Shown: positions 21,003-47,605 of the stretch, piece by piece
Layout of the letters: the number at the start of each line of letters is the position of its first letter
Position numbering within the stretch: position 1 is the first letter of the stretch
Source: Octopus bimaculoides
Lineage: Eukaryota
Direction of reading: 5' to 3'
Assembly: GCF_001194135.2 (NCBI RefSeq)
Contig: NC_068999.1
Coordinates: 21,931,435-21,982,755, forward strand
Length of the DNA stretch: 51,321 nucleotides
Translations under genes and position numbers: made by a program
The notes under the pieces: model-generated
What the model was told of the DNA's origin: nothing
Database searches by the model: none
Seen by the model: only the letters and a program-made list of their open reading frames with translations

Positions 21003-21098
21003 ATGGATAATAATATTATTATCCTGGATTCTAGTGACTCAGAAGCAAGTGTTTTGGAAATTACTCCTGTGATAAAAGTTCAAAATTCGACTTGTCGG
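21003..21098 (+). CDS. Putative first coding exon of an unnamed SIM-repeat/C2H2 zinc-finger gene (MDNNIIILDSSDSEASVLEITPVIKVQNSTCR)
   Basis: gcaacATG start context, 32 open codons, cgg|gtatgt donor (phase 0). Homologous to the 24702-24794 exon; IIILDSSDSE resembles a SUMO-interacting motif. Confidence 0.72.
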
Positions 21099-21198
21099 GT
21101 ATGTATCTAAAAAAATAAACGTTTTCTTTTATGCTGAATAAATTTGTATTTATATGAAAGTGTTTTCGTTTGCCCACATAAAAAAATTTATTCTACAC

Positions 21199-21305
21199 CA
21201 GTGGTTCTCAACCCTTTTATTTAAATGAAGTTTTCCCACGTACCCCCTTTTAATATGCTTATATATAGATATGAAATTTTGCTGACCCCAGGTTGGGAAC
21301 CACTG
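21199..21305. mobile_element. 107-bp hAT (Charlie-like) MITE
   Basis: TIRs CAGTGGTTCTCAACC / GGTTGGGAACCACTG; the 8-bp flanks ttctacac / ttccctac match only partly. Confidence 0.7.
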
Positions 21306-21639
21306 TTCCCTACAAAAAAGAAAAATTACAGAATAAGAAACGAGGTGATGGTCATTGAAAGTTACAAAAACAATTATATTTACAATATTGTATATTCTAC
21401 ACCACTGTGATAATGTTTTTGAACATTATTTCCGGGTTCCATTCAAAGAAACGCATACAACTCGTTTCTAGCACATGAGTTGATGCGGGAATTGTTTTTG
21501 TTTATACTATTTTTAATTTTTCTTTTTCAGGCGAAGTTTTGGCAAATAAGAAAACAAAAGAAACACCCACATAACTTTTGTACAGTTTTTTTCTTTTTTT
21601 TTTAGTCGAAGAAAATTTGGTGGAGCTATGCTGTAAGCA

Positions 21640-22105
21640 CGGGTGCACTTGGCGGAGATATAAATGACCCCTCCAGCCCTTAAAAAACTTTTTTTGTTAT
21701 GGAATCCCACGTGTTCGGGTATGGAGATTCCGTTTACAATTTTTTTTTCAGATATAATCTCTGTATTTTTCTACGTATTTCGCAAAAAAAAAAGTTTCCG
21801 GAAAAATTGAAAAAGGAAGAAATGGGGGGATGGGGGCGGATTGAAATTTTGAAGTTGCGATTTTTGAAAAAAATTTTTTCAGAATCGGAATCTTCCTCCA
21901 AACCGGAAATGTGGGATTCCGTAAAAAAAAAAAAAAAAAATTCCGTTTACTTAATGTGCGCCTCCAAACAAGTGTCAACAGTAAAAAGACTGGTTAAAAA
22001 CAATCAAGAATTTGCAAACGATATTTTCGGGCCCCTCGTATCATTCATAATACCTGACTGGTAAAAGTAAATTACCGCCCCTTGTATCGTCCGACATGTT
22101 TGTTT
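21640..22105. promoter_or_regulatory. CpG-enriched segment near the 5' end of the SIM/C2H2 gene
   Basis: Visibly more CpG than the flanks; CCGGAA ETS-like cores (about 21798 and 21903), GGCGG boxes and TTTGAA motifs. Ends at an assembly gap. Confidence 0.35.
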
Positions 22106-22221
22106 NNNNNNNNNNNNNNNNNNNNNNNNNNNNNNNNNNNNNNNNNNNNNNNNNNNNNNNNNNNNNNNNNNNNNNNNNNNNNNNNNNNNNNNNNNNNNNN
22201 NNNNNNNNNNNNNNNNNNNNN
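22106..22221. other. Assembly gap
   Basis: N run. Confidence 1.
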
Positions 22222-22590
22222 TAGGGCAGCGGAGTCGCGGTCATAGGATCGCGATTTCGATTCCCAGACCGGGCGTTGTGAGTGTTTATTGAGCGAAAAC
22301 ACCTAAAAGCTCCACAAGGCTCCGGCAGAAGATGGTGGCGAACCCTGCTGTACTCTTTCACCACAACTTTCTCTCACTCTTACTTTCTGTTTCTGTTGTG
22401 CCTGTAATTCAAAGGGCCAGCCTTGTCACACTGTGTCACGCTGAATATCCCCTGAGAACTACGTTAAGGGTACACGTGTCTGTTGAGTGCTCAGCCACTT
22501 GCACGTTAATTTCACGAGCAGGCTGTTCCGTTGATAGGATCAATTGGAACCCTCGATGTCGTAAGCGACGGAGTGCCAACAACATTTTTG
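22222..22590 (+). mobile_element. tRNA-derived SINE sharing the group C 3' body but with a different 5' half
   Basis: gggccagccttgtcacac...gagaactacgttaagggtacac...cgacggagtgccaacaac matches the reverse complement of 12258-12430; the upstream 170 nt differ. Confidence 0.8.
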
Positions 22591-22959
22591 AGTATAAAAT
22601 ATTTAAAAATGGATGAATCTTTCTAATTTTTTTTGCATACATCATTTATTTTGTATGTATTTTCTATTTTCATAATTTTTTTTTTAATTGCATTTCATTT
22701 TCTTAGAGAGGTGCGTTTCTAAAGGAGCTCCATAGCATGCCTATTGAGAAGGTCGAAAGTCAACAACGTGTTGAAGCATTGAACCAAAGGGATCTAACCG
22801 TTTTTAGTCCAATCCCTTGTCACCATATAAAATCAATTTTTTAATGGGGGTGAGATAACCAAATTTACTAAGTAATTGTATGATGTTAGTATGTAGAATA
22901 CCTGGTTTCAGTGTTATTCTGTTTAGGGGTGAAAAAAATTAGACGCAGGTTTGACAATA

Positions 22960-23815: not shown

Positions 23816-23912
<97 letters not shown>

Positions 23913-24072: not shown

Positions 24073-24082
24073 TGCAATAACG

Positions 24083-24701: not shown

Positions 24702-24794
24702 AAGAAAAATAATTCTGTTATTGTTGTCTCAGACTCAAGTGATTGTGAGATAGTTTCTCCATTACCAGAAATGAAGTGCCAGAATTCTGTCATT
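24702..24794 (+). CDS. Exon 2 of the SIM/C2H2 gene (KKNNSVIVVSDSSDCEIVSPLPEMKCQNSVI)
   Basis: ttctatttttcag acceptor, att|gtaagt donor, 93 nt, phase 0-0, open; SIM-like VIVVSDSSD. Confidence 0.72.
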
Positions 24795-25168
24795 GTAAGT
24801 CTCACATACATTAATTTCTTATTGTCACAAAGTTATAGATTTATGATGTTCAAAATGATGGTAGATAAATTGTATGGTTTCAGAAGGGGACTACTTCGAA
24901 GGAGAATAAACTCTGAATTGATCTGTGTTGTTGTTTTCTTTTTATAGCACAAGCTTTGATACTTTCTGATCTGACTTCGTATAATTTCAAACCATCTTTA
25001 CAGATAGTTTATGATTTGCTCATCTTGCAGCTGGCTACATAAGAATCAAACATAAATCTGGTAAAACCCACTGAGTTCTTATTTTCTGTTCTTCTCCTAC
25101 ACACACACACTCACACATACACATACACATGCACATGCACACACATATATACATACACACACAAACAT

Positions 25169-25178
25169 NNNNNNNNNN
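25169..25178. other. Assembly gap (10 nt)
   Basis: N run. Confidence 1.
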
Positions 25179-25184
25179 ATACAT

Positions 25185-25490
25185 GTGCTGTGCGTGAGAA
25201 GACCCGGCAAGCCAAGTAAGATCGTTGCCAGTGCCCCTGGACTGGCTTGTGCGGGTGGCACATAAAAGACACTATTTCGAGCGTGGCCGTTTTCGTGCGG
25301 GTGACACGTAAAAGCACCCACTACACTCTCTGAGTGGTTGGCGTTAGGAAGGGCATCCGGCTGTAGAAAATCTGCCAAATTAGATTGGAGCCTGGTGTTG
25401 CCATCCGGTTTCACCAGTCCTCAGTCAAATCGTCCAACCCATGCTAGCATGGAAAGCGGACGTTAAACGATGATGATGATGATGATGAGT
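25185..25490 (+). mobile_element. 5'-truncated RTE LINE: ORF end (AVREKTRQAK*) plus 3'UTR and (GAT)n tail
   Basis: gctgtgcgtgagaagacccggcaagccaagtaa aligns with the ORF end of the RTE copy at about 25735 on the minus strand. Confidence 0.75.
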
Positions 25491-25504
25491 TCATTATCAT
25501 CATC

Positions 25505-27555
25505 ATCAATTGGAGTGGTTGGCAGGCAGGTATGGTAGATATGTAAAGGCATGGAGAAAGTGTAGATAGACACATGAGGGAGAGTGGAGGGGCCTGCAGT
25601 GGGTAGTGGGGATGTTAGGAAGATGGGTTGTGGGAGTGTTTTGCCAGAGGAAAGAATTACGTGTGTGTATGTATGAGGGGAAGAGGGTTATGGCTGTAAA
25701 TGACATGCCTCTAAGTATTGGTGGCCATGATTTTACTTAGCTTGATGTCATCTCAAGAAGAGCAAATCTCCAGAATTCTCGGCCCCTTGTCATTTCCTCA
25801 ATGAGGCTCAATATCTGAAGATCATTTCTCATTTCGTTCCATGTCTTCCTGAGTATATCCCTTCCACAAGCTCCTTTCACAATTTGAGATTGTCACTTCT
25901 TTGTGCAGTTTTCTTCATCCATATGCATCGCATGATCATACCAGCACAGTCTTCTCTCTTGCACACTACATCTGATGCCTCTTATACCCAGTCATATATG
26001 CATGCTGACATTGCCCATCCAGCAGAGCATACTAGCTTCATTTCTTTCAAACCTTCACATGTCCTCTGTAGTTACAACCCATGTTTTACTGCCATGTAGT
26101 ATAACTGTAACTACACAGCCATCATACAATCTTCTTTTCATTCTGAGGGAGAGGTCCTTTGTTGCAAACAAAGGTAGTAGCTCTCTGAACTTTGCCCAAC
26201 CCATTCTTATTCTCGCAACTACACTTTCAAATCTTCCTCCTCTACTGCTGACTGGGTCACCTAGATAATGGAAACTATCTACTACTTCTGAGGATCCCCC
26301 TAGACATTTGAGGGAGTCTGTTTTCTGTACATTCTTAGTGTTTATTGTACGTGCACGTCTGCCACACACAAAGACTACTTTTTCTTTAACCTTCCTTTGA
26401 TATCACTGCATTTCTTATTGTCCATAGTTTGCAATATGTGCACCATATGGAGTTTCTACCAACACCATTTTTGCATATCAAGCAGGGCTATCTCCATGAA
26501 GGGATAAGTGATTTGTCTGTTTTCCTACTTACTAGGACTTTGGTCTTTGCTAAATTAACTCTAAGGCTCTTTGATTCCTGTCTTTACTTCTGCACCTGAG
26601 ATTTCTTTTGTTCTGGTAGTGATTCAAAATAGGAACAAGGTCATCAATGTAGATGAGCTCCCAAAGGCAACCAGTCTTGAAATCTTCTAATATAGCCTAG
26701 AGGAATATGATAAGCAAGAGGGTATTGAGAACTGATCCTTGGTGAATGCCTTCCTGTACCCTAAATTCATTACTAGACTCATTGTCAACTTTCACCTTAC
26801 TGAAAGCATCTTAGTACATAGCTTTTACGGCTCTCACCAACCATTTGTCTATCCCTCACTTCAATATTGAGCACCAGATAAGGGAGCAGAGGATGCTGTC
26901 AAAGGCTTTCTCCATGTCAAGTACAGAGTTTTATTTTTGGCTAAATACTTCTGCAGATGCCTTACCAAGGTACTTCCTTGTTTAAAATCAAACTGCACTT
27001 CATCTAGGCTAACTCTCTTCCCAATTAGTTGAGCTCTTTGCAGAATCACTAACTGCAAGTGAACCATCATCCATGCAAATACACTTCCTCAACATCATGA
27101 TTTTCTCTGATACACTGTCATGCAATCCAAGATACCTCAAGTCTCTGGTCCTCACACCACAGAACATCGGTACACTTTCTTTCTTTCTAATTCTCTCCTA
27201 GCTAAATATACCTGTCTCCTAGCTTCCCTTCTTGCTACCTGATATAGTTCCCTGCTACCACCACTTTTCCAATCCAATTTCTTCACACTGATGGCTCTGT
27301 TTACATCCCTCTCCCATCAGGGCCCTCATTAAATTGTCCTGTAGGAACCTCCAGTTGTCCTCTGTGTTATATGTTACTATCTCCTTCTACTCATAAAATG
27401 CTTCTGTTAGAACATCTCTAAATCTCTGACTATTCAGAAGATCCTCATGCTTCCATATCTTTCTTTTCCAGGCTGGTTTGCTTTTTGGCATCCTTCTAGC
27501 TCAAATTCTGATGTTACTAACAATTAACTTATGTTGAGGTGTGTACTCTTTACCC
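25505..27555 (-). mobile_element. Degenerate RTE-clade LINE (end of endonuclease plus RT)
   Basis: KSFLGKEYTPQHKLIV, LDEVQFDFKQGST, WELIYIDDL (YADD box), VDSFHYLGD...RIRMGWAKFRELLPL; stops and frameshifts. Confidence 0.85.
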
Positions 27556-30857: not shown

Positions 30858-31018
30858 TCAAATGTCATCTAAAGCAGCAACTTCAGCTTTTTCTGAACAA
30901 TGTGCTGTAGGTTCTTCTAAGTTGTCTTCTGAGAATTTGCATTTACACTGGAGGCCAGATTCAGTGATTACTTCTCCAGCTTTTAAAATAACATTGTTAG
31001 GTGTGTAACAGTTCTCAC
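30858..31018 (-). CDS. Terminal exon of the secreted VWC-domain protein (G-ENCYTPNNVILKAGEVITESGLQCKCKFSEDNLEEPTAHCSEKAEVAALDDI*)
   Basis: gtgtttttatttcag acceptor, phase 1, completing Gly with the 41016 exon; TGA at 30860-58. CCPICPNG-ENC...I.AG...C.C...A.C parallels the C-terminus of vertebrate VWC2 as I recall it. Confidence 0.82.
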
Positions 31019-31704
31019 CTGAAATAAAAACACAAAAAATGAGTTTATTTCTATGACACTCATAAAGATTGGTTGGTTTTATGTTTTTTGAACATAACCA
31101 GATAGTGCAACTCATACCAACACATGCAAACAACCACCATTGATTAAGAACGTGGATGTATTTATATTATGTATTATTATTCCTTAAGACCTTCAAAGTT
31201 ACTACAAATGTTAGTTTCCACAATTTCTGCCTTTTCTTTGTGACCCTACATACATAACAAAGCTGAATTGTACCCCAAACACTAGTTTCTGTTAGTGCTT
31301 CTTTTATTTCTTTATTTGTCAAAATCACCCAAGCAAGACCCATAGGCAACTTGTATGCAATGTTAAGAGAAAAGACAGAAATAGGATTAATGCCACAATA
31401 CCTCTTTATATATGAGCATATTTAAGATAGCAAATAGAGGATGGCAATAAAGTAATTGACAAAAGATTTAAATGAAATACAATGAGATGGTAATAAAAGA
31501 ACTGATAAAAGCATTAACAGCAACAGAATCTGGTAAATTAGATGACAACAAAGTAAAATAGAATAAAATAAGAGGGTGATAAAAGAAATAATGGAAATCA
31601 TCATCATTGTTTAACGTCTGCCTTCCATGCTGGTGTGAGTTGGACAGTTTTACAAGAGCCAGCCATGCAGGGGCCTGCACCAGATTTCTGTGTCTGTTTT
31701 GGCA

Positions 31705-31922
31705 TATTGATTTCAAATTTTGGCACTAGGCCAGCAATTTCGGGGAAGGGGTAAGTCAGTTACATCAACCCCAGTGTTCAACTAGTACTTATTTTATTGA
31801 CCTCAAAAGGATGAAAGGCAAAGTCGACCTTGGTGGAATTTGAACTCAGAATGTAAAGACAGACAAGATGCTGCTAAGCATTTTGCCTTGCATGCTAACA
31901 GTTCTGCCAGCTCACTGCCTGA
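31705..31922 (-). mobile_element. SINE group B
   Basis: Matches the other B copies end to end. Confidence 0.85.
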
Positions 31923-31990
31923 AGTAATGGAAATATTAAAATGATAGAAACTACTAACATTTGGCAAGATACCTGTTATCTTGAATTTAA

Positions 31991-32210
31991 CCCTTCAATA
32001 TTTAGATTACTCTGTTAAATGTAATACCTTTTCACTCAAATCGTTTTGAATTAATCATGCATTATCTCATTGCTTTGAAATCTCAGTGATGTGATTATTT
32101 ATTTTTAGAATGTCAATGTGAGTTTGGTGTGAGAGGCTAGATGTGGCTAGTTCAAATATAAAACATGTAGAATATTTGGGCCGGATATGGCCAGTTTAAA
32201 CACTAAAGGG
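31991..32210 (-). mobile_element. 220-bp piggyBac-like MITE with intact TTAA-CCCTT...AAGGG-TTAA ends
   Basis: TTAA at 31987-90 and 32211-14. Confidence 0.85.
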
Positions 32211-32229
32211 TTAAAGATATGAAGGTCAT

Positions 32230-33200
32230 ACTACAGGAAAAATAATGGTAAAAAGAGTTTATTTCATAACTCAGCTGTTCTGGGAGATGAAGTCTTGTGC
32301 ATAGAACTAGAAATGTATCTGAGATACCAGGAAGCACAGATGTGATTTGCTAAATATGGCATCCCAGTCTGGTACAATTAGAGATTGATACTCATCTGAG
32401 CATCTTCCATAGAAGTAACAGTAGACAAAGGTCAGACTTCTAGCAGCATTCCATTGATGATAGAGTAGTTGGAGTGATAAATACTAGACTATATTCACTT
32501 CTGCACTGTCAAGAGTGAATAGTATCTGTTTGGAGAAAGTCACTCAAAGGTATGAGCAAGGCTTCATTTGGAGATTGATCTGGTTCTTGTAGAGACGCAA
32601 CAGAGATTGAGGTGTTAAGAACTATTTTGAATAGTAGAAAGAGCCCACCATTCTAGTGGCAATAATTGTGATTTAGGAATCCCATCCTGAATTAGATTTA
32701 AATTTGAGACTTAAGTGTCTCTTCAAGCAAAGAGATTCCTTCAAAATACTCATGTCCATCAAAATAAGATCAGGGGTTTCATGATGGTGATAGATATTAG
32801 GTTGTTCTTAAATGTAGCAAACCATGGCAATATTCCAGTTAAGTCACTGAAAAGATCTAAGTCTAAGTGCATGATGTTCTAAGTAGTGCACAGTGGGGTA
32901 TCATCAGCAAATGTGTCAATAAAGGATCTTATCAGGTAAATTATTAACACTTTGAAGAACATAGGTTTCAGGACAGATCATTAGGCCATGTCTGCATTGA
33001 TTTCATCAATGTTATAGGACTGATCATTAATGCAACTTTCAGGCATTATTCTTGGTAGGAATGGTGTGGTAGTAGAAAAGACTTCACTAGATATGCTACA
33101 GTTGATTAGTTTATAAAGCAGTCCTCTATATGATACTTTACCAAATGCATTGGAGATGTCTGAGTGAATAACAGGGGCATCAATGAAACATCCAAAGTAC
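32230..33200 (-). pseudogene. Degenerate CR1/L2-like LINE reverse transcriptase
   Basis: GSVLKPMFF, DTFADDTPL, PQSLLRLYKNQI and VYCYFYGRCSDE motifs in the correct order. Confidence 0.7.
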
Positions 33201-33227
33201 TAAATAGGAAATATATGTAGTAGGTAC

Positions 33228-33680
33228 TCATACCCACAGTTTATATTTATATACAGGTAGAATAGTTAGTGGGCTGTTATGTAGATGTATGTATATGCAC
33301 ATGTATGTAGGCAAATGGATATGAATGTAAACAGATAGACATACAGACGGATAGATGCATAGATAATATGAACAGATAAGCACACACACATACACATGTG
33401 ACGATTGAAACACATGACCATAAACACACATACTTCCCTTCACACAAGGACATGTGGAGACACACATCCATACATACAAGGACAGTACATAGTCACAAAA
33501 ACCCATACACAGACACACTCAGACATGCACACATAAGGAGACAGGTACACACACATAAAAACATGAACACACAAACGCCTAAATATGGAGAATACATATA
33601 TACATACATACACACATACGTGCATACACATGCACACTAACCCATACACATGCACACAAACAAACAAAAAACATAGCTCA
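33228..33680. repeat. Degenerate CA/TA-rich microsatellite field
   Basis: Direct inspection. Confidence 0.75.
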
Positions 33681-34589: not shown

Positions 34590-35292
34590 CATCATCATCG
34601 TTTAACATCCGCTTTCCATGCTAGCATGGGTTGGACGATTTGACTGAGGACTGGTGAACCAGATGGCTACACCAGGCTCCAATCTGATTTGGCAGAGTTT
34701 CTACAGCTGGATGCTCTTCCTAACGCCAACCACTCCGAGAGTGTAGTGGGTGTTTTTACGTGCCACCAGCACGAAGGCCAGTCAAGAAGTACTGGCAACA
34801 GCCACGCTCGAAATGGTGTATTTTACATGCCACCTGCACAGGAGCCAGTCCAGCGGCACTGGCAACGATCTCGCTCGAATGTCTTTTCACGTGCTACTGG
34901 CATAAGTACCAGGGAGGTGACGTTGGTAATGATCATGCTCAAATGGTGCTATTTACATGCCCCCGGCACGAAAGCCAGACAGCTGGAGCTCTGGCAACGA
35001 TCACGCTCGGACGGTGCTCTTAGTGATCTACTGGTACAGGTGCCATCATGATTTCGCTTTCGCTTGCCCCAACAGGTCTTCGCAAGCCGAGTTTAGTGTT
35101 GAATGAAGAGATGTTGGCATGGGTGCCAGTCTACAAATTTAGTTAGATTTTGATTTCGATTTCACTTGCCTCAACAGGTCTTCGCAAGAGGAGTTTAGTG
35201 TCCAAAGAAGGAATGTTACGCGTAAGTGGGCTGGCTACATCCCAGGCAGAGGCCTTGGATTTTGGTCTTACTTGGCTTGCCTGGTCTTCTCT
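34590..35292 (-). mobile_element. 5'-truncated RTE: EKTRQAK* plus about 700-bp 3'UTR with 62-bp units and an internal 50-bp duplication
   Basis: Duplication gatttcg...aacaggtcttcgcaag...gagtttagtgt at about 35050 and 35152; (ATC)n tail at about 34590. Confidence 0.8.
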
Positions 35293-35334
35293 TTCAGTGT
35301 TGAATATTTGATTCCATTGGATTTAAGTGTTCTG

Positions 35335-35995
35335 AGGGATTGTACAGAACCCCAGCGATATTGCACATCTGCAGCAGGAGTTGGACTCAATTTACAGATG
35401 GGCTGAGGATAATAATATGCAGTTTAATGCTGAAAAATTCCAAGCCCTGCACTACCAGCGTCCAAAACTGAATATGAAACTTACAGGGTACATTGGTCCA
35501 CAGGGAATTACAATTCCAGAGCCTAAATCAGTGAGGGACCTGGGTATCGACATGAGTCATGATACCTCTTTCCAAGCGCACATCACCAGGATCACAACAA
35601 AGTGCAGACGACTGGCTGGATGGATCCTACGAACATTCAGAACCAGAGATAAGAAAACCATGATGGTTCTCTGGAGGACATTCGTCCTCAGCCACCTGGA
35701 TTACTGCTCACAGCTATGGTCACCCACCAGTGTGAAATTAACAGCGGATCTTGAAGCAATGCAGAGAAAATTCACAAAGATCGTCTCTTTGCAACTACTC
35801 AGCTACTGGGAAAGGCTGAAACAGCTAAGACTCTACTCCCTGGAGAGAAGACGGGAGAGGTATGCAGTAATATACATCTGGAAGATGCTGGAAGGAATTG
35901 TGCCAAATTTTGGCATTGAAAGCTACACCAATGCCAGAACGGGAAGACACTGCATAGTGCCAAAGATCCCAGCAATGCCATTGCACTTCAGGACC
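35335..35995 (+). mobile_element. CR1-clade LINE, C-terminal RT region (largely open)
   Basis: WAEDNNMQFNAEKFQ...RDLGI...LDYCSQLWSP...LYSLERRRERY in ORF 35381-36151. Confidence 0.88.
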
Positions 35996-36185
35996 ACAGC
36001 CTTCCAAATCATGAGGATGGGGGCATCTTTGTATGAAAAAGCCTTAACTCTTTATTTTTTAGACCCCCCCACTCATCATCCCACTCCAGACCTATTTTGG
36101 CCAATTTTTTTTGCATTTCAAAACAATGGGAAAAGGCATTTCAGTAATTAAAAATTTTAAAAATTAAAAATTTTAAAAATTAAAA

Positions 36186-37060
36186 NNNNNNNNNNNNNNN
36201 NNNNNNNNNNNNNNNNNNNNNNNNNNNNNNNNNNNNNNNNNNNNNNNNNNNNNNNNNNNNNNNNNNNNNNNNNNNNNNNNNNNNNNNNNNNNNNNNNNNN
36301 NNNNNNNNNNNNNNNNNNNNNNNNNNNNNNNNNNNNNNNNNNNNNNNNNNNNNNNNNNNNNNNNNNNNNNNNNNNNNNNNNNNNNNNNNNNNNNNNNNNN
36401 NNNNNNNNNNNNNNNNNNNNNNNNNNNNNNNNNNNNNNNNNNNNNNNNNNNNNNNNNNNNNNNNNNNNNNNNNNNNNNNNNNNNNNNNNNNNNNNNNNNN
36501 NNNNNNNNNNNNNNNNNNNNNNNNNNNNNNNNNNNNNNNNNNNNNNNNNNNNNNNNNNNNNNNNNNNNNNNNNNNNNNNNNNNNNNNNNNNNNNNNNNNN
36601 NNNNNNNNNNNNNNNNNNNNNNNNNNNNNNNNNNNNNNNNNNNNNNNNNNNNNNNNNNNNNNNNNNNNNNNNNNNNNNNNNNNNNNNNNNNNNNNNNNNN
36701 NNNNNNNNNNNNNNNNNNNNNNNNNNNNNNNNNNNNNNNNNNNNNNNNNNNNNNNNNNNNNNNNNNNNNNNNNNNNNNNNNNNNNNNNNNNNNNNNNNNN
36801 NNNNNNNNNNNNNNNNNNNNNNNNNNNNNNNNNNNNNNNNNNNNNNNNNNNNNNNNNNNNNNNNNNNNNNNNNNNNNNNNNNNNNNNNNNNNNNNNNNNN
36901 NNNNNNNNNNNNNNNNNNNNNNNNNNNNNNNNNNNNNNNNNNNNNNNNNNNNNNNNNNNNNNNNNNNNNNNNNNNNNNNNNNNNNNNNNNNNNNNNNNNN
37001 NNNNNNNNNNNNNNNNNNNNNNNNNNNNNNNNNNNNNNNNNNNNNNNNNNNNNNNNNNNN
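36186..37060. other. Assembly gap
   Basis: N run. Confidence 1.
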
Positions 37061-38090
37061 AAAAGCCTCTTCCCACAGTTTTTAAGTTAAAAAGAAAATG
37101 GTCAAAATCGGTCTGGATAGTTATTTTAAGGCTTATAGCATTCCAAATAGCCATAACAACAAAATCACTTTTAGATTTATTTTACAAAAATTATATGGGT
37201 ATTTTTTAAAAATTTTCATTCATAGATAATGTTTTTACATTATATATACATTAATAGATTAAACTGTCTGTTTTCCAAATAGCAAATTAAAACTTGAAAA
37301 CATTGAAAGAGAAAGTGAGAGACTTTGCAAATGAAAATGGTATACTCTGCAGTGAACGTAATGAATATTTAAATTTGCGAGAAATTGGAGTTGAAAAATT
37401 CAATAAACTTGAGAAATCGAAATTATAGGAAATTTCTTAGAACATGAATTTATAATAATATTTCCAAATGTTCAACCCTTTATAAATTGCTTTCTTTTAG
37501 TACTTTTAGTAACTGTTACATCCCTAATTAATAAGTAGCTTTCTCCATTATTGTATAGATATAGGTATTGTTATATATGTGTGTGTGTTTTAGATGTGCA
37601 ATATTTTGAAATCAAAAATGTTTAATATTTAATTTCATGTATTTTAAAATTTATGTGTATGAGTGAGATTGTTGAAGTAAACATAATTCTTGATAAAAAT
37701 TTGCACAGTGATTTGAGAACAAAACCTTTACTACATTTCACCTGCACTTAATGTCTCTGATTGCCACTCACTACCACTTCATTTGTTGTTTAATCTCCTT
37801 CTACCAGCATGACTGATGAGGCACATATTGCATTTCATTATTTGCAAGATGAATTCTAAATTAGCTCAGTCAGAAATTTGTAAGGAAGAAGTATTGTTGA
37901 TTGAATTAACCCCAGTACTTAGCTGGTACTGATACTTATTTATTGAACCTCAATAATTAAAAAGTTAATAAAATGTTCCCCACCCACACTAAGGGAGATC
38001 TGAACTCTCAACATAAAGCTATGCAAACTGTATGATTTATGACATTAATCTCTAATCTGCTATCCACTTACCTCCTAAAATATATATTAA

Positions 38091-38301
38091 CCCTTTAAAA
38101 TTTAGATTACTCCGTCAAATGTAATATTTATTTACGTTGCTTTAATTAATCATGCATTATTTTGTAGTTTTGAGATTTCGATTGTGTGACTGTTTATTTT
38201 TAGAATGACATTGTAGGGAAGGTGTGAGAAGCTGGGTCTTGCCAGTTAGAACGTAAAACAGCTGGAATATTGTGGTCAGACACTGCTGGTTTAAATGCTA
38301 A
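38091..38301 (-). mobile_element. piggyBac-like MITE copy
   Basis: TTAA-CCCTTT left end; body similar to 31991-32210; right end decayed. Confidence 0.7.
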
Positions 38302-38519
38302 CAATGAATCGAATAAAAGTAATAATAGCAATGGTAATAATGATGGTAGCAGCAGCAACTGCTGCTTCTATGGGTGCAAGGCCAGCATCTTTAAAGGAAA
38401 GAGTTGATGCTATTGACCAAAGTAGTTGACTGCTACTTTACTTTTTTAACCCTGAAAGGATGAAAGCAAAGTTGACCTCAGCAGTATTTGAAATAAGGTG
38501 AAGAGCTGGATCAAATAAT

Positions 38520-38735
38520 CTTTTCTACTCGAAGCACAAGGCCTCAAATTTTGGGGAAGGGATTAAGTCAATTACATCAACCCCAGTGTGCAAGTGGTAC
38601 TTATTTAATCGACCCCGAAAGAATGAAAGGCAAAGTCGACCTTGGCTGAATTTGAACTCGAAATGTAAAGACAGATGAAATACCACTAAGCACTCTGCCC
38701 AGCGTGCTAATGATTCTGCTAGCTTGCTGCTTTGT
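38520..38735 (-). mobile_element. SINE group B (best copy of a local cluster spanning 37880-40260)
   Basis: gcacaaggcctcaaatttt...aaagtcgaccttggctgaatttgaactc...ctagcttgctgc. Confidence 0.85.
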
Positions 38736-39529
38736 GTTGGATCAAATAATGCAAAACATTTTTTTGTTATGCTCTAATGATTCCACTAGCTAACTACCTT
38801 AACAGTAATAATAATTTCTTAAGTAAGAATGATTAACGATGAGGTACCTTTGTTGACTTGACCCCAATAGATGACCACTTATTTCATTCACTCTGGAGAG
38901 ATGGGAAGCAAAGTCGATTTGAATTTAAAATGCAATGGGATGAAATTAAATATTGTTAGGCATTCAGCTTGATACTATGTTATTTTTATTACTCTGTAAT
39001 CCAAAAGATAGTCTTATAAAGACAACACATTCTTTGAAAAAGGCTGTTGATAAAATAGTACAGAGAAGCTATTACTGTCCCTAATTTAGGGTCACAATAA
39101 TTACATGTGAATATGTGCATGTTAAACATTTTACAAAAATAATCATTTTTAATCCTATTTATGCAAGGTTGGCTTGCTTTATTGATGTGAACAAACTTTT
39201 TCCGTTTAACCTATCACCATTAGCTAGGTCCTGGAGGAGTAGTTTTCCCACTACAAACGGGTCTACGGTAGGTGCCTAAATTTGAACTCAGTGAACCAGA
39301 GGAAGTACTATAAGGCATTGTATTCCAATCTTAAAGAAAACAATAATAGTTTCTGGTTTAGGCTGAAGGCCAGCATTTTTGTATTGAAGGGTTTAGCTGA
39401 TACCGTTGATCTTGTGCTTAACTGCTACTTTTATTTTATAAACCTCAGAGGGATGAAAGGGAAAGCTTAGCTTGACAGGATTTGAATAGAGAGCATAAAG
39501 TGCTGAAAGCAATACCACAAGGCATGACT

Positions 39530-40072
39530 GTAGGTAAAAGTACATTGGGATGTTAACCAAGTGTCTGGATTCAAAGTAGCAGAAAAGTGCTATGAACACA
39601 AGCCAGATGTTGTGATTAGAGAATAAGAATTAAGGATTTAATGGAATTTCTCCATGAAGATTGACCATACTATTAAAGCAAGAAGACCAAATATGGTTTT
39701 AGAGGATAAAAGAAACAGTAAATCCTAGACTTTGCACTACCATGTGATAATAGAGTGGTTATGAAGAGAATTGAAAAATCTGAGAATTTTCAGGACTTAG
39801 CCAGAGCAATGAAGAAATTGTGGAAGACTAAGATAATTATTATTTCTGTGGTAATTAGTGCACTTGGCAAAACACCTGAACTGCTACCTAAGAGCCTGAA
39901 AGATTTTGGTATGAACACTCATTGTTGACTTACTGAAAAGTGCAATTCTATATTCTGCAAGAAACCTAAGAAATATTCTTGAGATTTGAGGAAACTTGTT
40001 ACCAAACCTCAAGATAACATCCCTGCTAACTAATACAGAATGTATTAGTTAATAACAATAGTAATAATGTTT
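39530..40072 (+). mobile_element. R4/Dong-like non-LTR retrotransposon 3' end (restriction-like endonuclease), degenerate
   Basis: VHWDV...YEHKPDVV...ARRPNMV...DFALPCD...KSENFQDLA...LWK...VVISALG, followed by a TAA-rich tail. Confidence 0.8.
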
Positions 40073-40260
40073 CTAATTTAGGTACAAGGTCAGCAGTTTT
40101 GAGGGCAGAGGGTTGGTCAATATCACTGACCCCAGCACTTAACTGGTATTTTATTTATTGACCACAAAAGGATGAAAGGCAAAGTTGTTCTTGACAGGAT
40201 TTGAACTTGGAACTTATAGATCTGGAGCAAATACTACAAGACATTTTTGTTGAATGCTCT
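40073..40260 (-). mobile_element. SINE group B, tail-to-tail with the Dong-like fragment
   Basis: tttctaatttaggtacaaggtcagcag...ggatgaaaggcaaagttg. Confidence 0.75.
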
Positions 40261-41015
40261 AACAAGTTTGCCAGCTTATAGCCTTAATAATAACAATTTT
40301 TAATTTTAGCACAAAACTACACAATTCTAGAGCAGGATATAGTAAATTCAAATCAACCTCAGAATAAAGACAATTTTGACAAAATTTAAATTTTGAAAGA
40401 AAAGAAATGTAACTAAATATCCACAAGCATTTTGACTTGAAAGGCAGGTTGTATGGTGCTTGTGTACTAAGTGTAATATTGCATGGTAGCAAAACACAAG
40501 TATTGAATGTGGAGGATGATTGAAAGCTGGAAAAGAATGAGGTGAGCATGTTCCATTGGATGTGTACTGTTAGTGTAAATGACTGATAGAGCACAAACGA
40601 GTCAATAGAAAAACTGAGTATAAGATAAAATGGCCATAGTTTGTCAGAGAGGAGACTGCATTGATATCTACATGTGATGCATATGGAAGATGACAGCTGG
40701 ATAAAGAACTTGCAGAAAGGATAAAGAAAGAAGAATTTTATGAAGGAAACAAGGGACTGAAAATAGTGGTGAGTAGCTGCATTAGAGAAGACCTGTCCAA
40801 ACCATTCAAGCAGGGGAAACATTATAAAATGGTAATAATTCTAGAAGTTACACAGAGAATTTTTTTAAAAAAGCATTATCACACAATACACTTATATTAC
40901 ATAAATATAAGGAAGACAAACTGTGTTACAAATACCCAAAGTACATAGAACTTTACTGGTGTGTGTATAAAGAGCACATTACCGACTGATAATAATAGTA
41001 TTTGTAATTACTTAC

Positions 41016-41358
41016 CATTTGGGCAAATTGGACAGCATTCATCTTCAACATCTTTGAAATCAACACAGTTAAGTTTAGGGCAAACAGTTTCATTACAATT
41101 CAGTCTACCATCTGCATTACATGTACATTGCTTGCACGGTTTCTTATTCACCGTTCTTCCAATTGGTATAAAACCATCTTCTGTTTCACATCCTTGAACA
41201 TCTTCATCACCCTCATCTACAGGTGCTATTGTTGGTTCCAGACTCAGCTGACTTTCAATTACATTTTCATCCACTGTAGGTTCTGGTGGCATCCCTTTTA
41301 TAGGGGATATTCCCCAGGTGCAGTAGAGCAGAACAAAAAGTATTACTGAATACTTCAT
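41016..41358 (-). CDS. First coding exon of a secreted VWC-domain protein (brorin/VWC2-like): signal peptide, acidic linker, 10-Cys VWC domain
   Basis: MKYSVILFVLLYCTWG hydrophobic N-terminus; C...CKQCTC...C...C...C...CCPIC VWC pattern; aatg|gtaagt donor, phase 1. Confidence 0.88.
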
Positions 41359-42660: not shown

Positions 42661-42664
42661 TTTC

Positions 42665-43868: not shown

Positions 43869-43962
43869 GTTTCAACTATAAAAAGCAAGAGGAAGCGCTC
43901 ATTAAACAGAAATGAAACTTTGAAAAACAATTCAGTTCTGACACAGCCAAAACCAAAATACA
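43869..43962 (+). CDS. Exon 3 of the SIM/C2H2 gene (VSTIKSKRKRSLNRNETLKNNSVLTQPKPKY-S)
   Basis: cattaaag acceptor and a|gtacgt donor; 94 nt, phase 0-1, which matches the phase-1 start of the 46749 exon. NLS-like KSKRKR; repeats the KNNSV motif of exon 2. Confidence 0.6.
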
Positions 43963-44114
43963 GTACGTACCTTTATTTTTTCATACTATGCAGCTATTTA
44001 TATTTCTTCTGTCCTTGGATTAACATAACTTGCAATTCTAATTTAAGTTTTCGCTGTATTTGAGCCTCTTTAATGCAATTGCTAATAAACTCATTATCTT
44101 TCTCTCTGTTTATT

Positions 44115-44270
44115 GCATGGCTGTATGGTTAAGTTTGTTTTGCAACAACATGATATTGGGTCCCATCCTTCTATGTATCCCTTTGGACAAGGGCTTTCTA
44201 CTATAGCCTCAGTCTTGTGAATGAAATTGTATAGAAGCCTGTTGTGTGTGTGTGTGTGTGTGTGTTTTTC
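44115..44270 (+). mobile_element. SINE group A head ending in (GT)n
   Basis: gcatggctgtatggttaag...ctactatagcctc...gaagcctgttgtgtgtg. Confidence 0.65.
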
Positions 44271-45399
44271 TGTCTTTCTTCAGTTACATGTGAAGACTAA
44301 TAGACTAGAAATCCTTCATTTGAGAAAGCAGAGTTGGTAATAATTTCATGCATTAGCTTATTGCCAAACTCCTGTAGAGCAGAACATGAGTAATGGTAGG
44401 AAAAGCAAAGAATTAGTATAGTATATCAGTGTGCAAGATGTTGGAAGGTGCTAGTAGGAGATGATTTTCTCATTGTCATCATTATCATCATATACTTTAT
44501 TTTTCATGTTGGTATGTGTTGGACAGGTTGTTATAGTCTGGATTAGTTCTTATTTGGAGTTTACTGCATTCCGAAACAAATTGGTGATCATATCTCACTC
44601 GTATATTTTATTTATTGGCATAGTTTCTATGGCTGATTGCTCATCCTAACCCAAAGTATACTGGGTGTATTTTATTGAGACTCCAGCAATAGAAAAGTTG
44701 TCTTGTCCCTGATAAGGCTAGCGTCCTCTCTGCCTCATCTCTTTCAAGGCAACTTGACGAGAAGGTGAAAAGAAGAGAGAATGGTGGAAGAGAATGAGTG
44801 AGTGTGTGATAAAAAAGAGAAAATGATGAAAGAAAGTGATAGGATGAGGGAGGAGTAATGGGAGAAAGACAGTGACAGGCAGTTACATTTTGGTTGTTGG
44901 TAAGGAGACTGAGTAGGAGACAGCATGAACAATGTGATGAGAAACAGTGATGGAAAGGAGAGGGTAATGGAAGTGAGAGAGTGATGGTGGAGTGAGTTGT
45001 GTGAAAGAGAGGGAGAGAGAATGATGGGTAGCATAAAGATGGGTGATGGTAAGAGAGTGTTGAATGTCAAATAATAGGGGAGATATTAAAGGAAGAGAGG
45101 CAAAAGGTGAGTAGTGGCTAGCAATAAAGAGGGCTGATCGGAGAGGCATCTCATTACTGAGATGGCATGATGTGAAAGAGATAGTGATAGAAAAAGTAAT
45201 TGATAGAATGTAATAAAGAGAGATGGAGATTGGTAAAGGAGACTTAACATGAACATGATAGGTGGATGAGATCCAAATGTAGTCACTATACTTCTCAATT
45301 TCCATCACCACCACCATCCATTTTGCTATACATGCATGGGTTGGGTAGATATTTTCCATGTAATATTTTGTCATATCTCTTGTGAGCCTCTTGAAATCA

Positions 45400-46170
45400 A
45401 TCTTCACTTCAACTCATGTCTTCCCAGCTCTCTTATATCCAGTTTCTCTCTCAGTTAATTTGTGCTATTGCCTGTGCTTTCAGTGTAGTACGCTTACCTT
45501 ATTTCTTTCTCATGCAGCACCACGCTACAAATACAAATATCATACTGCTCCGAGAGAGAAATGTTTGTTGCGAGTAGAGATAATAGCTCCCTCAACTTTT
45601 TTCGTTTCATTCTTAGTCATCTGTGTTTTCAGAACATTCACCTCCATTGCTAATTGGGTCACCTAGGTTACAAAAACTATCAATTTTCCGAGAAAGAGCT
45701 CCTTGAGTATTGAAAGGAATCTATTCATATGCATTTTTATTCCCAGCTGCTCCTGAACATCCCACAATTACTAAGTCTACCATCAGCTTACTTGTAATCT
45801 TACCACACCTCTTGTGCATTCATAGTTTACATTGAGTATACCATATGGAAATTTCTTCCTGCTTATTTTCTACATGTTAAGCATAACCACTTCTTGACAG
45901 TTGTAAGGGACCTATCTTTCTTACTAAAACTTTAATCTTTACTAAGTTTATTTTCAGACTTCTCAATTCTAGGTTTTGTTTCCATGTCTGAAATTTCTTT
46001 TCTAAACATTCTAAAGATTCAGCAACAAGAACTAGATCATCGGCATTCAAGAGTTCTCACAGACTGCTGGTCTTAAACATTTCTCTGTTATTGGCCTGGA
46101 CACCTACTTGTACACTCGACTCTCTGCCAACTCTCGACTTGGTATGACACTCCTCTACATGGCCTGCACT
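45400..46170 (-). mobile_element. Degenerate RTE LINE RT fragment
   Basis: LLNADDLVLVAES (YADD box) and KLRELLSLLAT. Confidence 0.72.
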
Positions 46171-46748
46171 GCTTTGAAGCCATTTATCTATTAGTTTTGT
46201 TAGTGACGGCCAGAATACAGAGAGTGAAACCCTGTTAAATTTTTTCTCAAGAAATAGTGCATTGGTGGTACTTCAGCCTGACGTAAACCTGAACTCTATT
46301 TCATCTAAACTAATTTTCTTCCTCAACAAATGTGATATATAAACATACATATATATATTAGTTTTTTTAAATTTTAGATGTACTCTTTATTAGTTTTACA
46401 GAGCAGTACATTCCTTATTTAAGATTAATATTTTCCTTACATCTCTATAAATATAAAAAAAGCTATTAAAAAATGTTGATAATTATCTCATAACTCACAA
46501 ACCCTTGACTCATTAGTTGCATTTATGGTGTCATGTAGTGTACAGGAGAGGACTATGATGGTATAAACATGTGGTATTTTTAACCTTTTCAGGCCTTTCC
46601 AAGGCAATTAATGTTCTGGATAAATTTAAATAGGTACATTTGTATTATTAGATAGATGTTATTTAATGGTTTTAATTGGGAACCAGGAATTCTGTTCAGA
46701 TTAATATTTATTTTATTTTTGTCATAAACAAAATTGTTTCATTTTCAG

Positions 46749-47605
46749 GTGTTGGTTTACATTCTTTGCATTCTAAGTCATCTCTGGTAAATCCTTCCAA
46801 ACCACCTCCTGAAAATCAAGCAACAAAATCTCCACAGAATAAAACTAATGAGTGTCATCACAATCAGACCAAGCCATCTAAGAAGGATCTTCTCAAAACA
46901 CCTGTCAAACTTTCTCCCAAAATAAACAAAACTCTCGGGATGCCAACGAAAATACCAACCAGGTTCTCTCCCCGGTTATCATCTATGATACAGGCCAAGC
47001 AGTCTCTCAGGATGCCAACTAAGATCTCAGTTAGTCACCCTCATTGTACACCTGTAAAAGTTCCAGTCAGGCAATCTTCTAGAAACATAGCTAAGTCAAC
47101 AAGGAAGTACTCTCCCAGGAAATTAGCCAAAAATCCATCTAAAAAACCTATTTCGATGTTGAAATCTTCTCATAAAATTCTCAAGATGTTTGCTTCTAAG
47201 TCAAATAAGATACCTTCTGAAAAATCTACAAAAAAAAGAGTAAAACACAATGTATATCATAATAAAGAACCGTCTTCGAATAAGCATATCATTCCACAGT
47301 CTACTAATTTGCAGACTTCATTAAATCTAATAAACAACACTTCCAATTTGAATGGCCTAAATAGTTTGTTTACTTCTAATTCCGGTAAAAATCTCCAACA
47401 CAATTGTAAAGGTAATGGAATACAAACTCAGTTTTGCTGTCCAGTGATAAACTGTGAAATAAAATTCTCTTCCAAAGAAAATCTACAAAATCACATGGAT
47501 ATGATGATTCACAATTCATGTAATCCTTCAAAGAGCATTATGAATTCTTTTTTGTCCTGTGAAATCCTAAATTACATTTGTCCAAAATGTGGGAAAGAAT
47601 TTAAG
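46749..47605 (+). CDS. Large exon 4 of the SIM/C2H2 gene: Lys/Ser/Pro-rich region, one complete C2H2 finger (CPVINC...H...H) and half of a second (CPKCGKEFK)
   Basis: 857 open nt inside ORF 46676-47644; tttcattttcag acceptor (46747-48) and aag|gttggt donor (47606-07). The second finger is split by the intron, and no completing exon was found in the window. Confidence 0.8.

What the first reader, a model, noticed from the sequence alone, without database searches (positions are those of the whole stretch)
21003..47605. Unnamed gene encoding tandem SUMO-interacting-like motifs, a basic phospho-repeat region and C2H2 fingers
Seen: four exons with canonical splice sites and compatible phases (0, 0, 1, 0) join into a 380-aa open frame. 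Exons 1 and 3 are absent from the ORF track. Architecture: IIILDSSDSE and VIVVSDSSD (plus VLEIT and EIVS), then KSKRKR, then a Lys/Ser/Pro-rich region, then a C-x4-C-x12-H-x5-H finger and a split second finger. Established: a hydrophobic core followed by Ser/acidic residues is the phospho-SIM pattern of PML, PIAS and Daxx; tandem SIMs read poly-SUMO (RNF4); tandem SIMs with C2H2 fingers occur in the vertebrate SUMO ligase ZNF451; octopus has a large C2H2 expansion. Inference: a candidate SUMO-reading chromatin factor, possibly functionally analogous to KRAB-ZNF/ZNF451-type repressors. It lacks the ZNF451 PxRP linker. This is the best candidate for an undescribed system in the window.
Basis: partly seen in the sequence, partly recalled or inferred. 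Interest (0 to 1): 0.78.

Follow-up and report, generated by a model that had tools for sequence, protein, structure and literature searches.

The report
Octopus ZNF451 gene, first four exons

Summary
The four exons (21003-21098, 24702-24794, 43869-43962, 46749-47605) have GT-AG borders and join into 380 aa. These are identical to residues 1-380 of the NCBI protein "E3 SUMO-protein ligase ZNF451 [Octopus bimaculoides]" (787 aa).

All three assembly gaps lie in introns. Gap-free loci of O. vulgaris and Argonauta hians have the same nine coding exons with the same phases. Exons 5-9 lie beyond the window's 3' end and encode more C2H2 fingers and a PIN_11 domain (E 8e-64), the signature domain of ZNF451.

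So this is not an unnamed gene or an undescribed system.

The SUMO-related reading is reasonable. An acid/Ser-flanked SIM cluster is conserved in octopods and is unlikely by chance. The "ligase" label is untested:
- The catalytic PxRP linker was found in both vertebrate representatives examined and in none of the 17 invertebrate relatives.
- Octopods show no detectable coiled coil, the part that binds TOP2 in vertebrates. A basic Lys/Ser/Pro-rich disordered stretch sits in its place.
- Octopods carry a duplicated SIM exon.

No cDNA evidence for junctions 1-2, 2-3 and 3-4 could be obtained. Interest is low.

The parts
21003..21098 (+). Coding exon 1 (aa 1-32). Holds the start codon, SIM core IIIL followed by DSSDSE (21015-21044), a second core VLEI exactly 8 residues later (21051-21062), and VIKV (21069-21080).
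   Evidence: Identical to P0002. 66% nt identity to Argonauta against about 50% in the flanking introns. dN/dS of exons 1-2 against Argonauta is 0.23.
24702..24794 (+). Coding exon 2 (aa 33-63). Holds SIM core VIVV followed by SDSSDCE (24717-24749) and EIVS. It is a diverged tandem duplicate of exon 1.
   Evidence: Exon 1 and exon 2 are 57.5% identical in DNA; the alignment score beats 2000 of 2000 shuffles in DNA and 5000 of 5000 in protein. The exon is present in O. vulgaris and Argonauta.
43869..43962 (+). Coding exon 3 (aa 64-94, plus the first base of codon 95). Holds the NLS-like KSKRKR (43881-43898). Poorly conserved.
   Evidence: Length is 94/88/79 nt in three octopods, always 1 mod 3. 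Only 49% nt identity to Argonauta.
46749..47410 (+). Exon 4, first part (aa 95-315). A basic Lys/Ser/Asn/Pro-rich disordered region with net charge +45 and six S/T-P sites. It contains the cephalopod-conserved motif VKHNVYHNKEP (47240-47272).
   Evidence: Composition. AlphaFold2 pLDDT is below 50 with no secondary structure over aa 1-322. dN/dS is 0.34 to 0.74. A transcript contig of a related octopod covers this frame.
47438..47527 (+). First C2H2 finger of ZNF451 type: C-x4-C-x12-H-x5-H followed by NSCNP (aa 325-354).
   Evidence: Pfam PF23101 Zf-C2H2_ZNF451_1st, E 9.5e-5, 22.7 bits (cut-off 27). C325, C330, H343, H349, C352 and P354 are invariant in 11 molluscan homologues. Aligns to finger 1 of vertebrate ZNF451.
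47579..47605 (+). First half of the second finger (CPKCGKEFK), cut by a phase-0 donor at 47605|gt. The rest (FEQACSEHQRSSNH) is in exon 5, outside the window.
   Evidence: An intron-free transcript contig (L001) reads straight through this junction.
47606..51321 (+). Start of intron 4. It holds no further coding exon of this gene. The window ends at a 1358-N gap, and exon 5 starts about 1.96 kb beyond the window end.
   Evidence: tblastn of homologues gives no hit here. Window-to-locus mapping and exon chain.

Best explanation
Window 21003-47605 holds coding exons 1-4 of 9 (aa 1-380 of 787) of the Octopus bimaculoides orthologue of ZNF451/ZATT.

Shown:
- The gene structure.
- Identity to the annotated protein.
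- Family membership, through the C-terminal PIN_11 domain and the ZNF451-type finger block.
- Predicted disorder of aa 1-322.
- Conservation of the SIM cluster in octopods.

Inferred mechanism:
- The N-terminal cluster of three or four SUMO-interacting motifs, each next to a Ser/Asp/Glu run that CK2-type phosphorylation could strengthen, binds SUMO or SUMO chains. This brings the protein to SUMOylated chromatin or DNA-repair substrates.
- KSKRKR and the very basic Ser/Pro-rich stretch give nuclear import and perhaps unspecific DNA contact and CDK/MAPK-type regulation.
- The conserved fingers and the PIN-like domain, encoded downstream of the window, do the substrate and DNA work, as ZF1-4 and the PIN-like domain do in vertebrate ZATT.

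I think it is a multivalent SUMO reader rather than a proven ligase. The catalytic PxRP linker of the vertebrate enzyme is absent. The acidic runs also lie differently: between the two SIM cores in octopus (core, acidic spacer, core), but outside them in human (acid, core, spacer, core, acid).
For: Identity and structure:
- Exon structure and frame.
- The 380 aa equal P0002 1-380, 'E3 SUMO-protein ligase ZNF451 [Octopus bimaculoides]'.
- The window maps to GCA_001194135.2 CM046619.1, and a unique nine-exon GT/GC-AG chain reproduces the protein.
- The same nine exons and phases occur in gap-free O. vulgaris and Argonauta loci.

Family membership:
- PIN_11 PF18479 at E 8e-64 and PF23101 at E 1.8e-4 in P0002.
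- PIN_11 is described as the C-terminal domain of bilaterian ZNF451, specific to Eumetazoa (PMC5499597).
- A profile of molluscan homologues retrieves vertebrate proteins at E 8.9e-75. These carry all ZNF451-specific Pfam families, and the N-terminus of P0035 matches PDB 5D2M 'Zinc finger protein 451'.
- BLASTP of P0002 against vertebrate P0035: PIN 42% identity, E 2e-36; fingers colinear, E 3e-16.

SIM cluster and disorder:
- The SIM cluster has a chance probability of 1e-4 to 2e-3 and is conserved in O. vulgaris and Argonauta.
- dN/dS of exons 1-2 is 0.23.
- SIM plus acid/Ser motifs recur in every family member examined.
- AlphaFold2 predicts aa 1-322 disordered, with fingers and PIN folded.

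Literature. The vertebrate domain map and the functional weight of ZF1-4 and the PIN-like domain come from bioRxiv 10.64898/2026.07.14.738426.
Against: - No binding or activity data exist for any invertebrate ZNF451. SIMs are loose motifs.
- PF23101 scores below Pfam's cut-off in this protein (22.7 against 27 bits).
- The N-terminus gives no detectable sequence match to the human tandem-SIM peptide.
- No PxRP, no UIM, no detectable coiled coil and no matches to the Pfam models of the later ZNF451 fingers (PF23102, PF23103, PF23107, PF23108), so function may differ from the vertebrate protein.
- Junctions 1-2, 2-3 and 3-4 rest on the NCBI model and on comparative evidence, not on cDNA I could see.
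- dS against Argonauta is saturated, so the dN/dS values are rough.
Confidence: 0.85

Rival explanations
1. It works as a true ZNF451-type SUMO E3/E4 enzyme. Two neighbouring SIMs (IIIL and VLEI) hold the donor SUMO and the backside SUMO on Ubc9 and so catalyse chain growth, as in human ZNF451.
For: The two cores are separated by exactly 8 residues, the spacer length called critical in human ZNF451 (PMC12751080). Two correctly spaced SIMs can be enough for catalysis (same review). In cells, PLRP mutants R40A and R40E keep residual activity (PMC12630355). NCBI names the protein a ligase.
Against: The spacer DSSDSEAS has no Pro or Arg. In the human enzyme the PLRP motif is described as catalytically critical and the spacer contacts Asp19 of UBC9. 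The acidic flanks sit between the cores, not outside them, so the orientations of the two SIMs are probably swapped relative to human. PxRP is absent from all 17 invertebrate members examined and present only in the two vertebrate representatives. The founding paper calls it a 'vertebrate SUMO enzyme family' (title cited). The NCBI name is transferred by homology.
Confidence: 0.3
2. One reading: an undescribed SUMO-reading chromatin repressor, unrelated to but analogous with KRAB-ZNF or ZNF451 proteins.
For: Tandem SIMs plus C2H2 fingers are present in the window. Taken alone, the 380 aa gave almost no database hits.
Against: The full protein is a clear ZNF451 family member and is already annotated as such. 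There is no KRAB domain or any other repressor domain.
Confidence: 0.03
3. Gene-model or assembly artefact: exons 1-3 are chance open frames or belong to another transcript, and were joined across mis-scaffolded gaps.
For: Three gaps lie between the exons. Exon 3 is poorly conserved, at 49% identity to Argonauta, which is intron level. No cDNA was seen for these junctions.
Against: The same exon order, splice sites and phases occur in two gap-free assemblies, with length differences that are always multiples of 3. Exons 1 and 2 are conserved above intron background. cDNA-derived decapod cephalopod homologues also start with SIMs (MEDSIIILDNDSTIVLDSSDSE) on the same mRNA as the fingers and PIN domain.
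Confidence: 0.03

Closest known systems
Vertebrate ZNF451 / ZATT (human Q9Y4E5; PDB 5D2M for the N-terminal SIM module)
   Same: - N-terminal SIM cluster with Ser/acidic flanks.
- ZNF451-type first finger (C-x4-C-x12-H-x5-H-x2-C-x-P).
- Colinear block of the first fingers (E 3e-16).
- C-terminal PIN_11 domain (42% identity).
- Same overall order: SIMs, linker, fingers, linker, PIN.
   Different: - No PxRP between the SIMs.
- No detectable coiled coil, which is the TOP2 'hook' region in vertebrates. A 250-aa basic Lys/Ser/Pro-rich disordered region sits in its place.
- About 5-6 finger-like units by my reading of the AlphaFold2 model, against the 12 reported for human.
- None of the vertebrate models PF23102, PF23103, PF23107 or PF23108 is matched.
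- No C-terminal UIM.
- 787 aa against about 1061-1084 aa.
Other molluscan ZNF451-like proteins (decapod cephalopods P0005/P0006, Haliotis P0008/P0010/P0011, Mya P0012)
   Same: Same fingers and PIN domain, with many invariant columns. SIM plus acid/Ser motifs. No PxRP and no UIM.
   Different: Those proteins keep a conserved helical segment (LLESV..RFEQN... then a V..W-A-K-type motif) between the SIMs and finger 1. AlphaFold2 predicts helices 49-90 and 106-127 in the decapod protein. Octopods give no hit to an HMM of that segment in protein or in six-frame DNA of three loci and have no predicted helix. Octopods alone have the extra SIM exon.
RNF4-type poly-SUMO readers (STUbLs)
   Same: Several closely spaced SIMs in a disordered N-terminus, which suits multivalent binding of SUMO chains (established knowledge; PMC12751080).
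   Different: No RING domain anywhere in the 787-aa protein. No homology.

Membership tests
ZNF451 protein family (bilaterian) | C-terminal PIN_11 domain (PF18479), described as specific to ZNF451 homologues in Eumetazoa | tested here: met
   P0002 aa 652-768, E 8e-64, 213.5 bits against a cut-off of 26.6. Family description in PMC5499597. The domain is encoded by exons outside the window.
ZNF451 protein family (bilaterian) | ZNF451-type first C2H2 finger (PF23101) | tested here: inconclusive
   E 9.5e-5 but 22.7 bits, below the cut-off of 27. Close orthologues pass: P0001 27.3, P0008 27.0, P0012 39.0. All zinc ligands and the C-x-P tail are invariant. Aligns to finger 1 of vertebrate ZNF451.
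ZNF451 protein family (bilaterian) | Colinear similarity of the finger block and PIN domain to a verified vertebrate ZNF451 | tested here: met
   P0035 was verified through PDB 5D2M and through six ZNF451 Pfam families. BLASTP against P0002 gives E 2e-36 for PIN and E 3e-16 for fingers 1-4. The profile search gives E 8.9e-75.
ZNF451 protein family (bilaterian) | SIMs in the disordered N-terminus | tested here: met
   Motif level only. IIIL+DSSDSE, VLEI and VIVV+SDSSD are conserved in three octopods. SUMO binding itself was not tested.
ZNF451-type SUMO E3/E4 ligase (vertebrate enzyme module: SIM, PxRP, SIM) | PxRP (PLRP) motif in the inter-SIM spacer, with an Arg that contacts Ubc9 | tested here: not met
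   No [PH]xRP occurs before finger 1 in P0002 or in any of 17 invertebrate members. It is present in the vertebrate representatives P0034 and P0035. The requirement is stated.
ZNF451-type SUMO E3/E4 ligase (vertebrate enzyme module: SIM, PxRP, SIM) | Eight-residue spacing of the two SIM cores | tested here: met
   IIIL (5-8), then DSSDSEAS (8 residues), then VLEI (17-20). The spacing rule is from PMC12751080. The spacer's composition and the placement of the acidic flanks differ from human.
ZNF451-type SUMO E3/E4 ligase (vertebrate enzyme module: SIM, PxRP, SIM) | Catalysis of SUMO2/3 chain formation | not testable with these tools
   Needs an in vitro SUMOylation assay.
Vertebrate ZATT (TOP2cc resolution) | Coiled coil between the SIMs and ZF1, ending in the V134/W137 hook that docks on the TOP2 tower | tested here: not met
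   An HMM of the molluscan helical segment gives a best E of 10 in six-frame translations of L003, L004, L005 and the window. No helix is predicted in aa 1-322, against two helices in the decapod homologue. A short motif, VKHNVYHNKEP, lies at a position comparable to the hook tip and is shared with decapods (ILTNDYHNAKRK). It resembles the fish variant VEYYAKKP. It is a possible remnant and was not tested.
Vertebrate ZATT (TOP2cc resolution) | C-terminal ubiquitin-interacting motif | tested here: not met
   The protein ends 3 residues after the last predicted helix of the PIN domain (...SLFQLSQV). No UIM-like pattern was found. That loose pattern also missed the UIM-like C-terminus (EEAIRRSLVEM) of vertebrate P0035, so the pattern test alone is weak.
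KRAB zinc-finger repressors | KRAB domain | tested here: not met
   No KRAB hit in Pfam scans of the 380 aa (E up to 10) or of P0002 (E up to 0.01).
RNF4-type STUbL | RING domain C-terminal to the SIMs | tested here: not met
   No RING hit in Pfam.

The most novel reading that the evidence does not exclude
Octopods have rebuilt the front end of an old SIM, finger and PIN protein. They doubled the SIM exon and turned the helical, TOP2-hooking segment into a long basic Ser/Pro-rich disordered region. Like all invertebrate ZNF451s, they lack PxRP. If invertebrate ZNF451s are SUMO readers and not ligases, then the SUMO E3/E4 activity is a vertebrate addition to an ancestral SUMO-guided zinc-finger and PIN (possibly nuclease) factor, and octopod ZNF451 may have lost or changed its link to TOP2.
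Probability: 0.35. Interest if true: 0.35.

Novelty: already known. Interest (0 to 1): 0.15.

Why it matters
As a gene it matters little. It is an annotated orthologue of a studied protein, so the scan's 'best candidate for an undescribed system' can be dropped.

The comparative by-products are of modest use to people working on ZNF451/ZATT:
- They separate what is old in the family (SIM cluster, first fingers, PIN_11 domain with four invariant Asp) from what seems vertebrate-only (PxRP catalytic linker, later fingers, UIM).
- They show one lineage, the octopods, in which the segment that hooks TOP2 in vertebrates is no longer recognisable.

That gives a natural test of which ZATT functions need the ligase module and which need the coiled coil.

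Tried and rejected
- Homologue searches with the window's own protein. The 380-aa query returned only one related transcript protein (P0001). The 149-aa N-terminus returned nothing, not even the identical NCBI protein, which surfaced only when P0001 was used as the query. So these searches gave no cDNA support for junctions 1-2, 2-3 and 3-4.
- PDB sequence search with the 380 aa: only generic fingers at E above 0.2, and no match to the human ZNF451 SIM peptide. A PDB search with the molluscan profile also gave only generic fingers.
- Foldseek of the full-length model against PDB: only weak Rossmann-like matches (best E 3.9e-3, TM 0.1 to 0.3), which are uninformative for the PIN domain.
- Search for further coding exons in 47606-51321: none.
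- Search for a hidden coiled-coil exon in introns or next to gaps: none in three loci.
- Pairwise alignment of the vertebrate coiled coil with pre-finger regions. Haliotis gives a weak colinear match (z 2.5; 38 of 2000 shuffles reach it). The bivalve-like P0017, the decapod and the octopus give nothing (z at most 1.6). Homology of the molluscan helical segment to the vertebrate coiled coil is therefore only suggestive.
- O. bimaculoides against O. vulgaris is too close (introns 59-95% identical) for an exon-versus-intron conservation test. Argonauta was used instead.
- Cappadocia et al. 2015 (PMC4709122) is not held in the library.
- A KRAB-like repressor and an RNF4-like STUbL were considered and rejected for lack of the defining domains.

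Full report
**1. The observation**

Exons. The four exons are in the sequence as described. Joined, 21003-21098, 24702-24794, 43869-43962 and 46749-47605 give 1140 nt and an open 380-aa frame. Every border is AG|exon|GT, and the lengths 96, 93, 94 and 857 nt give phases 0, 0, 1, 0. There is an in-frame stop 7 codons upstream of the ATG, and the start context is AACATGG.

Gaps. The scan program asked for the gaps to be tested first. 22106-22221 lies in intron 1. 25169-25178 and 36186-37060 lie in intron 2. None touches an exon.

Independent check of the joins. The loci of the orthologous genes in O. vulgaris (L004) and Argonauta hians (L005) contain no N. In each, a unique chain of nine GT/GC-AG exons reproduces the annotated protein. 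Exons 2, 3 and 4 differ in length between the three species (93/87/99, 94/88/79, 857/851/731 nt) but always keep the same remainder modulo 3. That is what coding constraint predicts and what chance open frames would not give.

**2. What the gene is**

Identity to an annotated protein. A related transcript-derived protein (P0001) was the only hit to the 380 aa. Using P0001 as the query brought up P0002, NCBI "E3 SUMO-protein ligase ZNF451 [Octopus bimaculoides]", 787 aa, together with O. vulgaris, Argonauta, cuttlefish, abalone and clam proteins named ZNF451-like.

Position in the genome. The window is GCA_001194135.2, chromosome CM046619.1, at about 21.93-21.98 Mb (window position = L003 position + 11002). 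It stops at a 1358-N gap. The gene has nine coding exons, and the window holds the first four. Exon 5 begins about 1.96 kb past the window end. So 47605 is a splice donor, not the end of the protein. A transcript contig from a related octopod (L001/L002) reads without interruption from the exon-4 frame through CPKCGQEFK|FEQMCLKH into the PIN domain.

**3. Family membership**

- P0002 carries PIN_11 (PF18479) at E 8e-64 and the "first zinc finger of ZNF451" model PF23101 at E 1.8e-4, which is below the cut-off.
- PIN_11 was defined as the C-terminal domain of bilaterian ZNF451 and is specific to Eumetazoa (PMC5499597).
- A profile of 11 molluscan homologues (A1), searched against 1.84 billion representatives, found 367 family members. 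Among them are P0035 and P0034.
- P0035 and P0034 carry most or all of the ZNF451-specific Pfam finger models plus PIN_11. The N-terminus of P0035 (DIEFISEGHLRPVLECIDLVSSDD) matches the human ZNF451 peptide crystallised in PDB 5D2M.
- BLASTP of the octopus protein against P0035 gives 42% identity over the PIN domain (E 2e-36) and a colinear alignment of the first finger block (E 3e-16).

This is orthology, not analogy.

**4. Anatomy of the part in the window**

Predicted structure. AlphaFold2 on the molluscan alignment gives aa 1-322 pLDDT below 50 with no secondary structure. The finger block 323-568 scores 70-90 and the PIN domain 644-784 scores 60-78.

SIM cluster. The disordered N-terminus holds IIIL followed by DSSDSE, then VLEI exactly eight residues later, then VIKV, and in exon 2 VIVV followed by SDSSDCE. 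Three acid/Ser-flanked cores within 45 aa arise in 1e-4 of whole-protein shuffles and in 0.2% of shuffles of aa 1-63. The cores are kept in O. vulgaris and Argonauta.

Exon duplication. Exons 1 and 2 resemble each other (NN-IIILDSSDSE...QNS and NNSVIVVSDSSD...QNS). The DNA and protein alignment scores exceed all 2000 and all 5000 shuffles. Decapod cephalopods have the two cores only four residues apart in one stretch (MEDSIIILDNDSTIVLDSSDSE). The octopod arrangement therefore looks like a lineage-specific exon duplication.

Basic region. The rest of the N-terminus (aa 64-315) is 16% Lys, 15% Ser, 10% Asn and 9% Pro. It has net charge +45 and six S/T-P sites.

Selection. This basic region evolves fast, with dN/dS 0.34 to 0.74. 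Exons 1-2 give 0.23, the fingers 0.14 to 0.16 and the PIN domain 0.12 to 0.28. These values are rough because dS against Argonauta is saturated.

**5. How it differs from the studied vertebrate protein**

Human ZNF451 catalyses SUMO2/3 chain growth with two SIMs separated by an eight-residue spacer. The spacer contains PLRP, whose Arg40 is needed for full activity. The first SIM holds the donor SUMO and the second holds the SUMO on the back of Ubc9.

- PxRP. The octopus has the eight-residue spacing, but the spacer is DSSDSEAS. The acidic run lies between the cores, not outside them. No [PH]xRP is present in any of 17 invertebrate members I examined, whereas both vertebrate representatives have it. 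The founding paper speaks of a "vertebrate SUMO enzyme family" (title cited).
- UIM and later fingers. The octopus protein has no UIM, and none of the Pfam models for the later ZNF451 fingers is matched.
- Coiled coil. In vertebrate ZATT a coiled coil (aa 60-139) ending in V134/W137 hooks onto the TOP2 tower domain and is essential for release of trapped TOP2, while the SIMs are dispensable for that function (bioRxiv 10.64898/2026.07.14.738426).
- Other molluscs keep a conserved helical segment at that place (LLESV..RFEQN..., then V..W-A-K). AlphaFold2 predicts helices 49-90 and 106-127 in the decapod protein.
- In octopods an HMM of that segment finds nothing in the proteins or in six-frame translations of three loci, two of them gap-free (best E 10), and no helix is predicted.
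- A short motif, VKHNVYHNKEP (aa 259-269), is shared with decapods (ILTNDYHNAKRK) and resembles the fish hook variant VEYYAKKP. It may be a remnant of the hook tip. This is a lead, not a result.

**6. Mechanism**

Shown: the gene identity, the exon structure, the predicted disorder, and the conservation of the SIM cluster, fingers and PIN domain.

Inferred:
- The SIM cluster binds SUMO or SUMO chains multivalently and so recruits the protein to SUMOylated nuclear substrates.
- The Ser runs could tune that binding through phosphorylation.
- KSKRKR serves nuclear import.
- The fingers and the PIN-like domain act on the substrate.

I rate a true E3/E4 activity at about 0.3, for the reasons in section 5.

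**7. Verdict**

The gene is already annotated as ZNF451 and belongs to a described family. The octopod-specific remodelling of the N-terminus and the absence of PxRP in invertebrates are small comparative points worth a note.

**What failed**
- No cDNA support could be obtained for the first three junctions.
- The structure search was uninformative.
- Similarity between the molluscan helical segment and the vertebrate coiled coil is only weakly supported.

Noticed in passing
window 30858-41358, minus strand (coding exons 41358-41016 and 31018-30858): A small gene lies nested in intron 2 of ZNF451 on the opposite strand. It encodes 167 aa with a signal peptide, a VWC domain (PF00093, E 1e-6) and a weak VWC2L C-terminal match, so it is a VWC2L/Brorin-like secreted protein. 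Its single intron of about 10 kb contains the 875-N gap. The same nested, antisense arrangement is found in Argonauta hians (L005 10580-13118, minus strand), so it is conserved in octopods.
   Followed up: partly
window 21003-21098 and 24702-24794: Exons 1 and 2 are diverged tandem duplicates of one SIM-bearing exon (57.5% nt identity; the score beats all shuffles). Both copies are kept in O. vulgaris and Argonauta, whereas decapod cephalopod proteins have the two SIM cores only four residues apart. Whether exon 2 is constitutive or alternative is unknown; NCBI lists several isoforms in O. vulgaris.
   Followed up: partly
L001 about 290-330 (transcript contig of a related octopod, Logan SRR11869387): The contig's reading frame shifts at an A10 run (CCAAAAAAAAAAGT). 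The upstream 118 aa, homologous to the window's Lys/Ser/Pro-rich region, are therefore in another frame, and the 523-aa protein P0001 starts at an artificial Met. This is probably an assembly or sequencing error at the homopolymer.
   Followed up: partly
window 6427-6738, minus strand, next to the 965-N gap at 6797-7761: A fragment of a DDE_3 (Tc1/mariner-type) transposase (PF13358, E 1e-5, below the cut-off).
   Followed up: partly
window 35381-36151 (+) and 26055-26369 (-), both in intron 2: Open frames that by eye look like the C-terminal part of non-LTR retrotransposon reverse transcriptases. Pfam gave no hit at E 0.01 or better, so this is unconfirmed.
   Followed up: partly
window 25097-25414 (-) and 34689-35051 (+); also about 19400-19513 and 9185-9330: A dispersed repeat. 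Two copies in opposite orientation in intron 2 share the translated stretch LQ(P/L)DALPNANHSESVVG(A/V)FTCH, and one copy includes a 67-nt unit repeated twice at 34749-34879. Shorter related pieces (…EAIVEDT…) lie upstream of the gene. It was not classified.
   Followed up: no
window 48018-48085 and many other sites (for example 1743-2583 and 33228-33724): A (CA)34 microsatellite in intron 4, and many TG/CA-rich stretches that create long spurious 'VCVCVC' open frames in the ORF list.
   Followed up: no
P0002 aa 652-768 (outside the window; L003 exons 7-9): The PIN_11 domain keeps four invariant Asp (D660, D662, D722, D748) across 11 molluscan proteins. This agrees with the published suggestion that the domain may be an active nuclease. 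No activity has been reported in the papers I read.
   Followed up: partly
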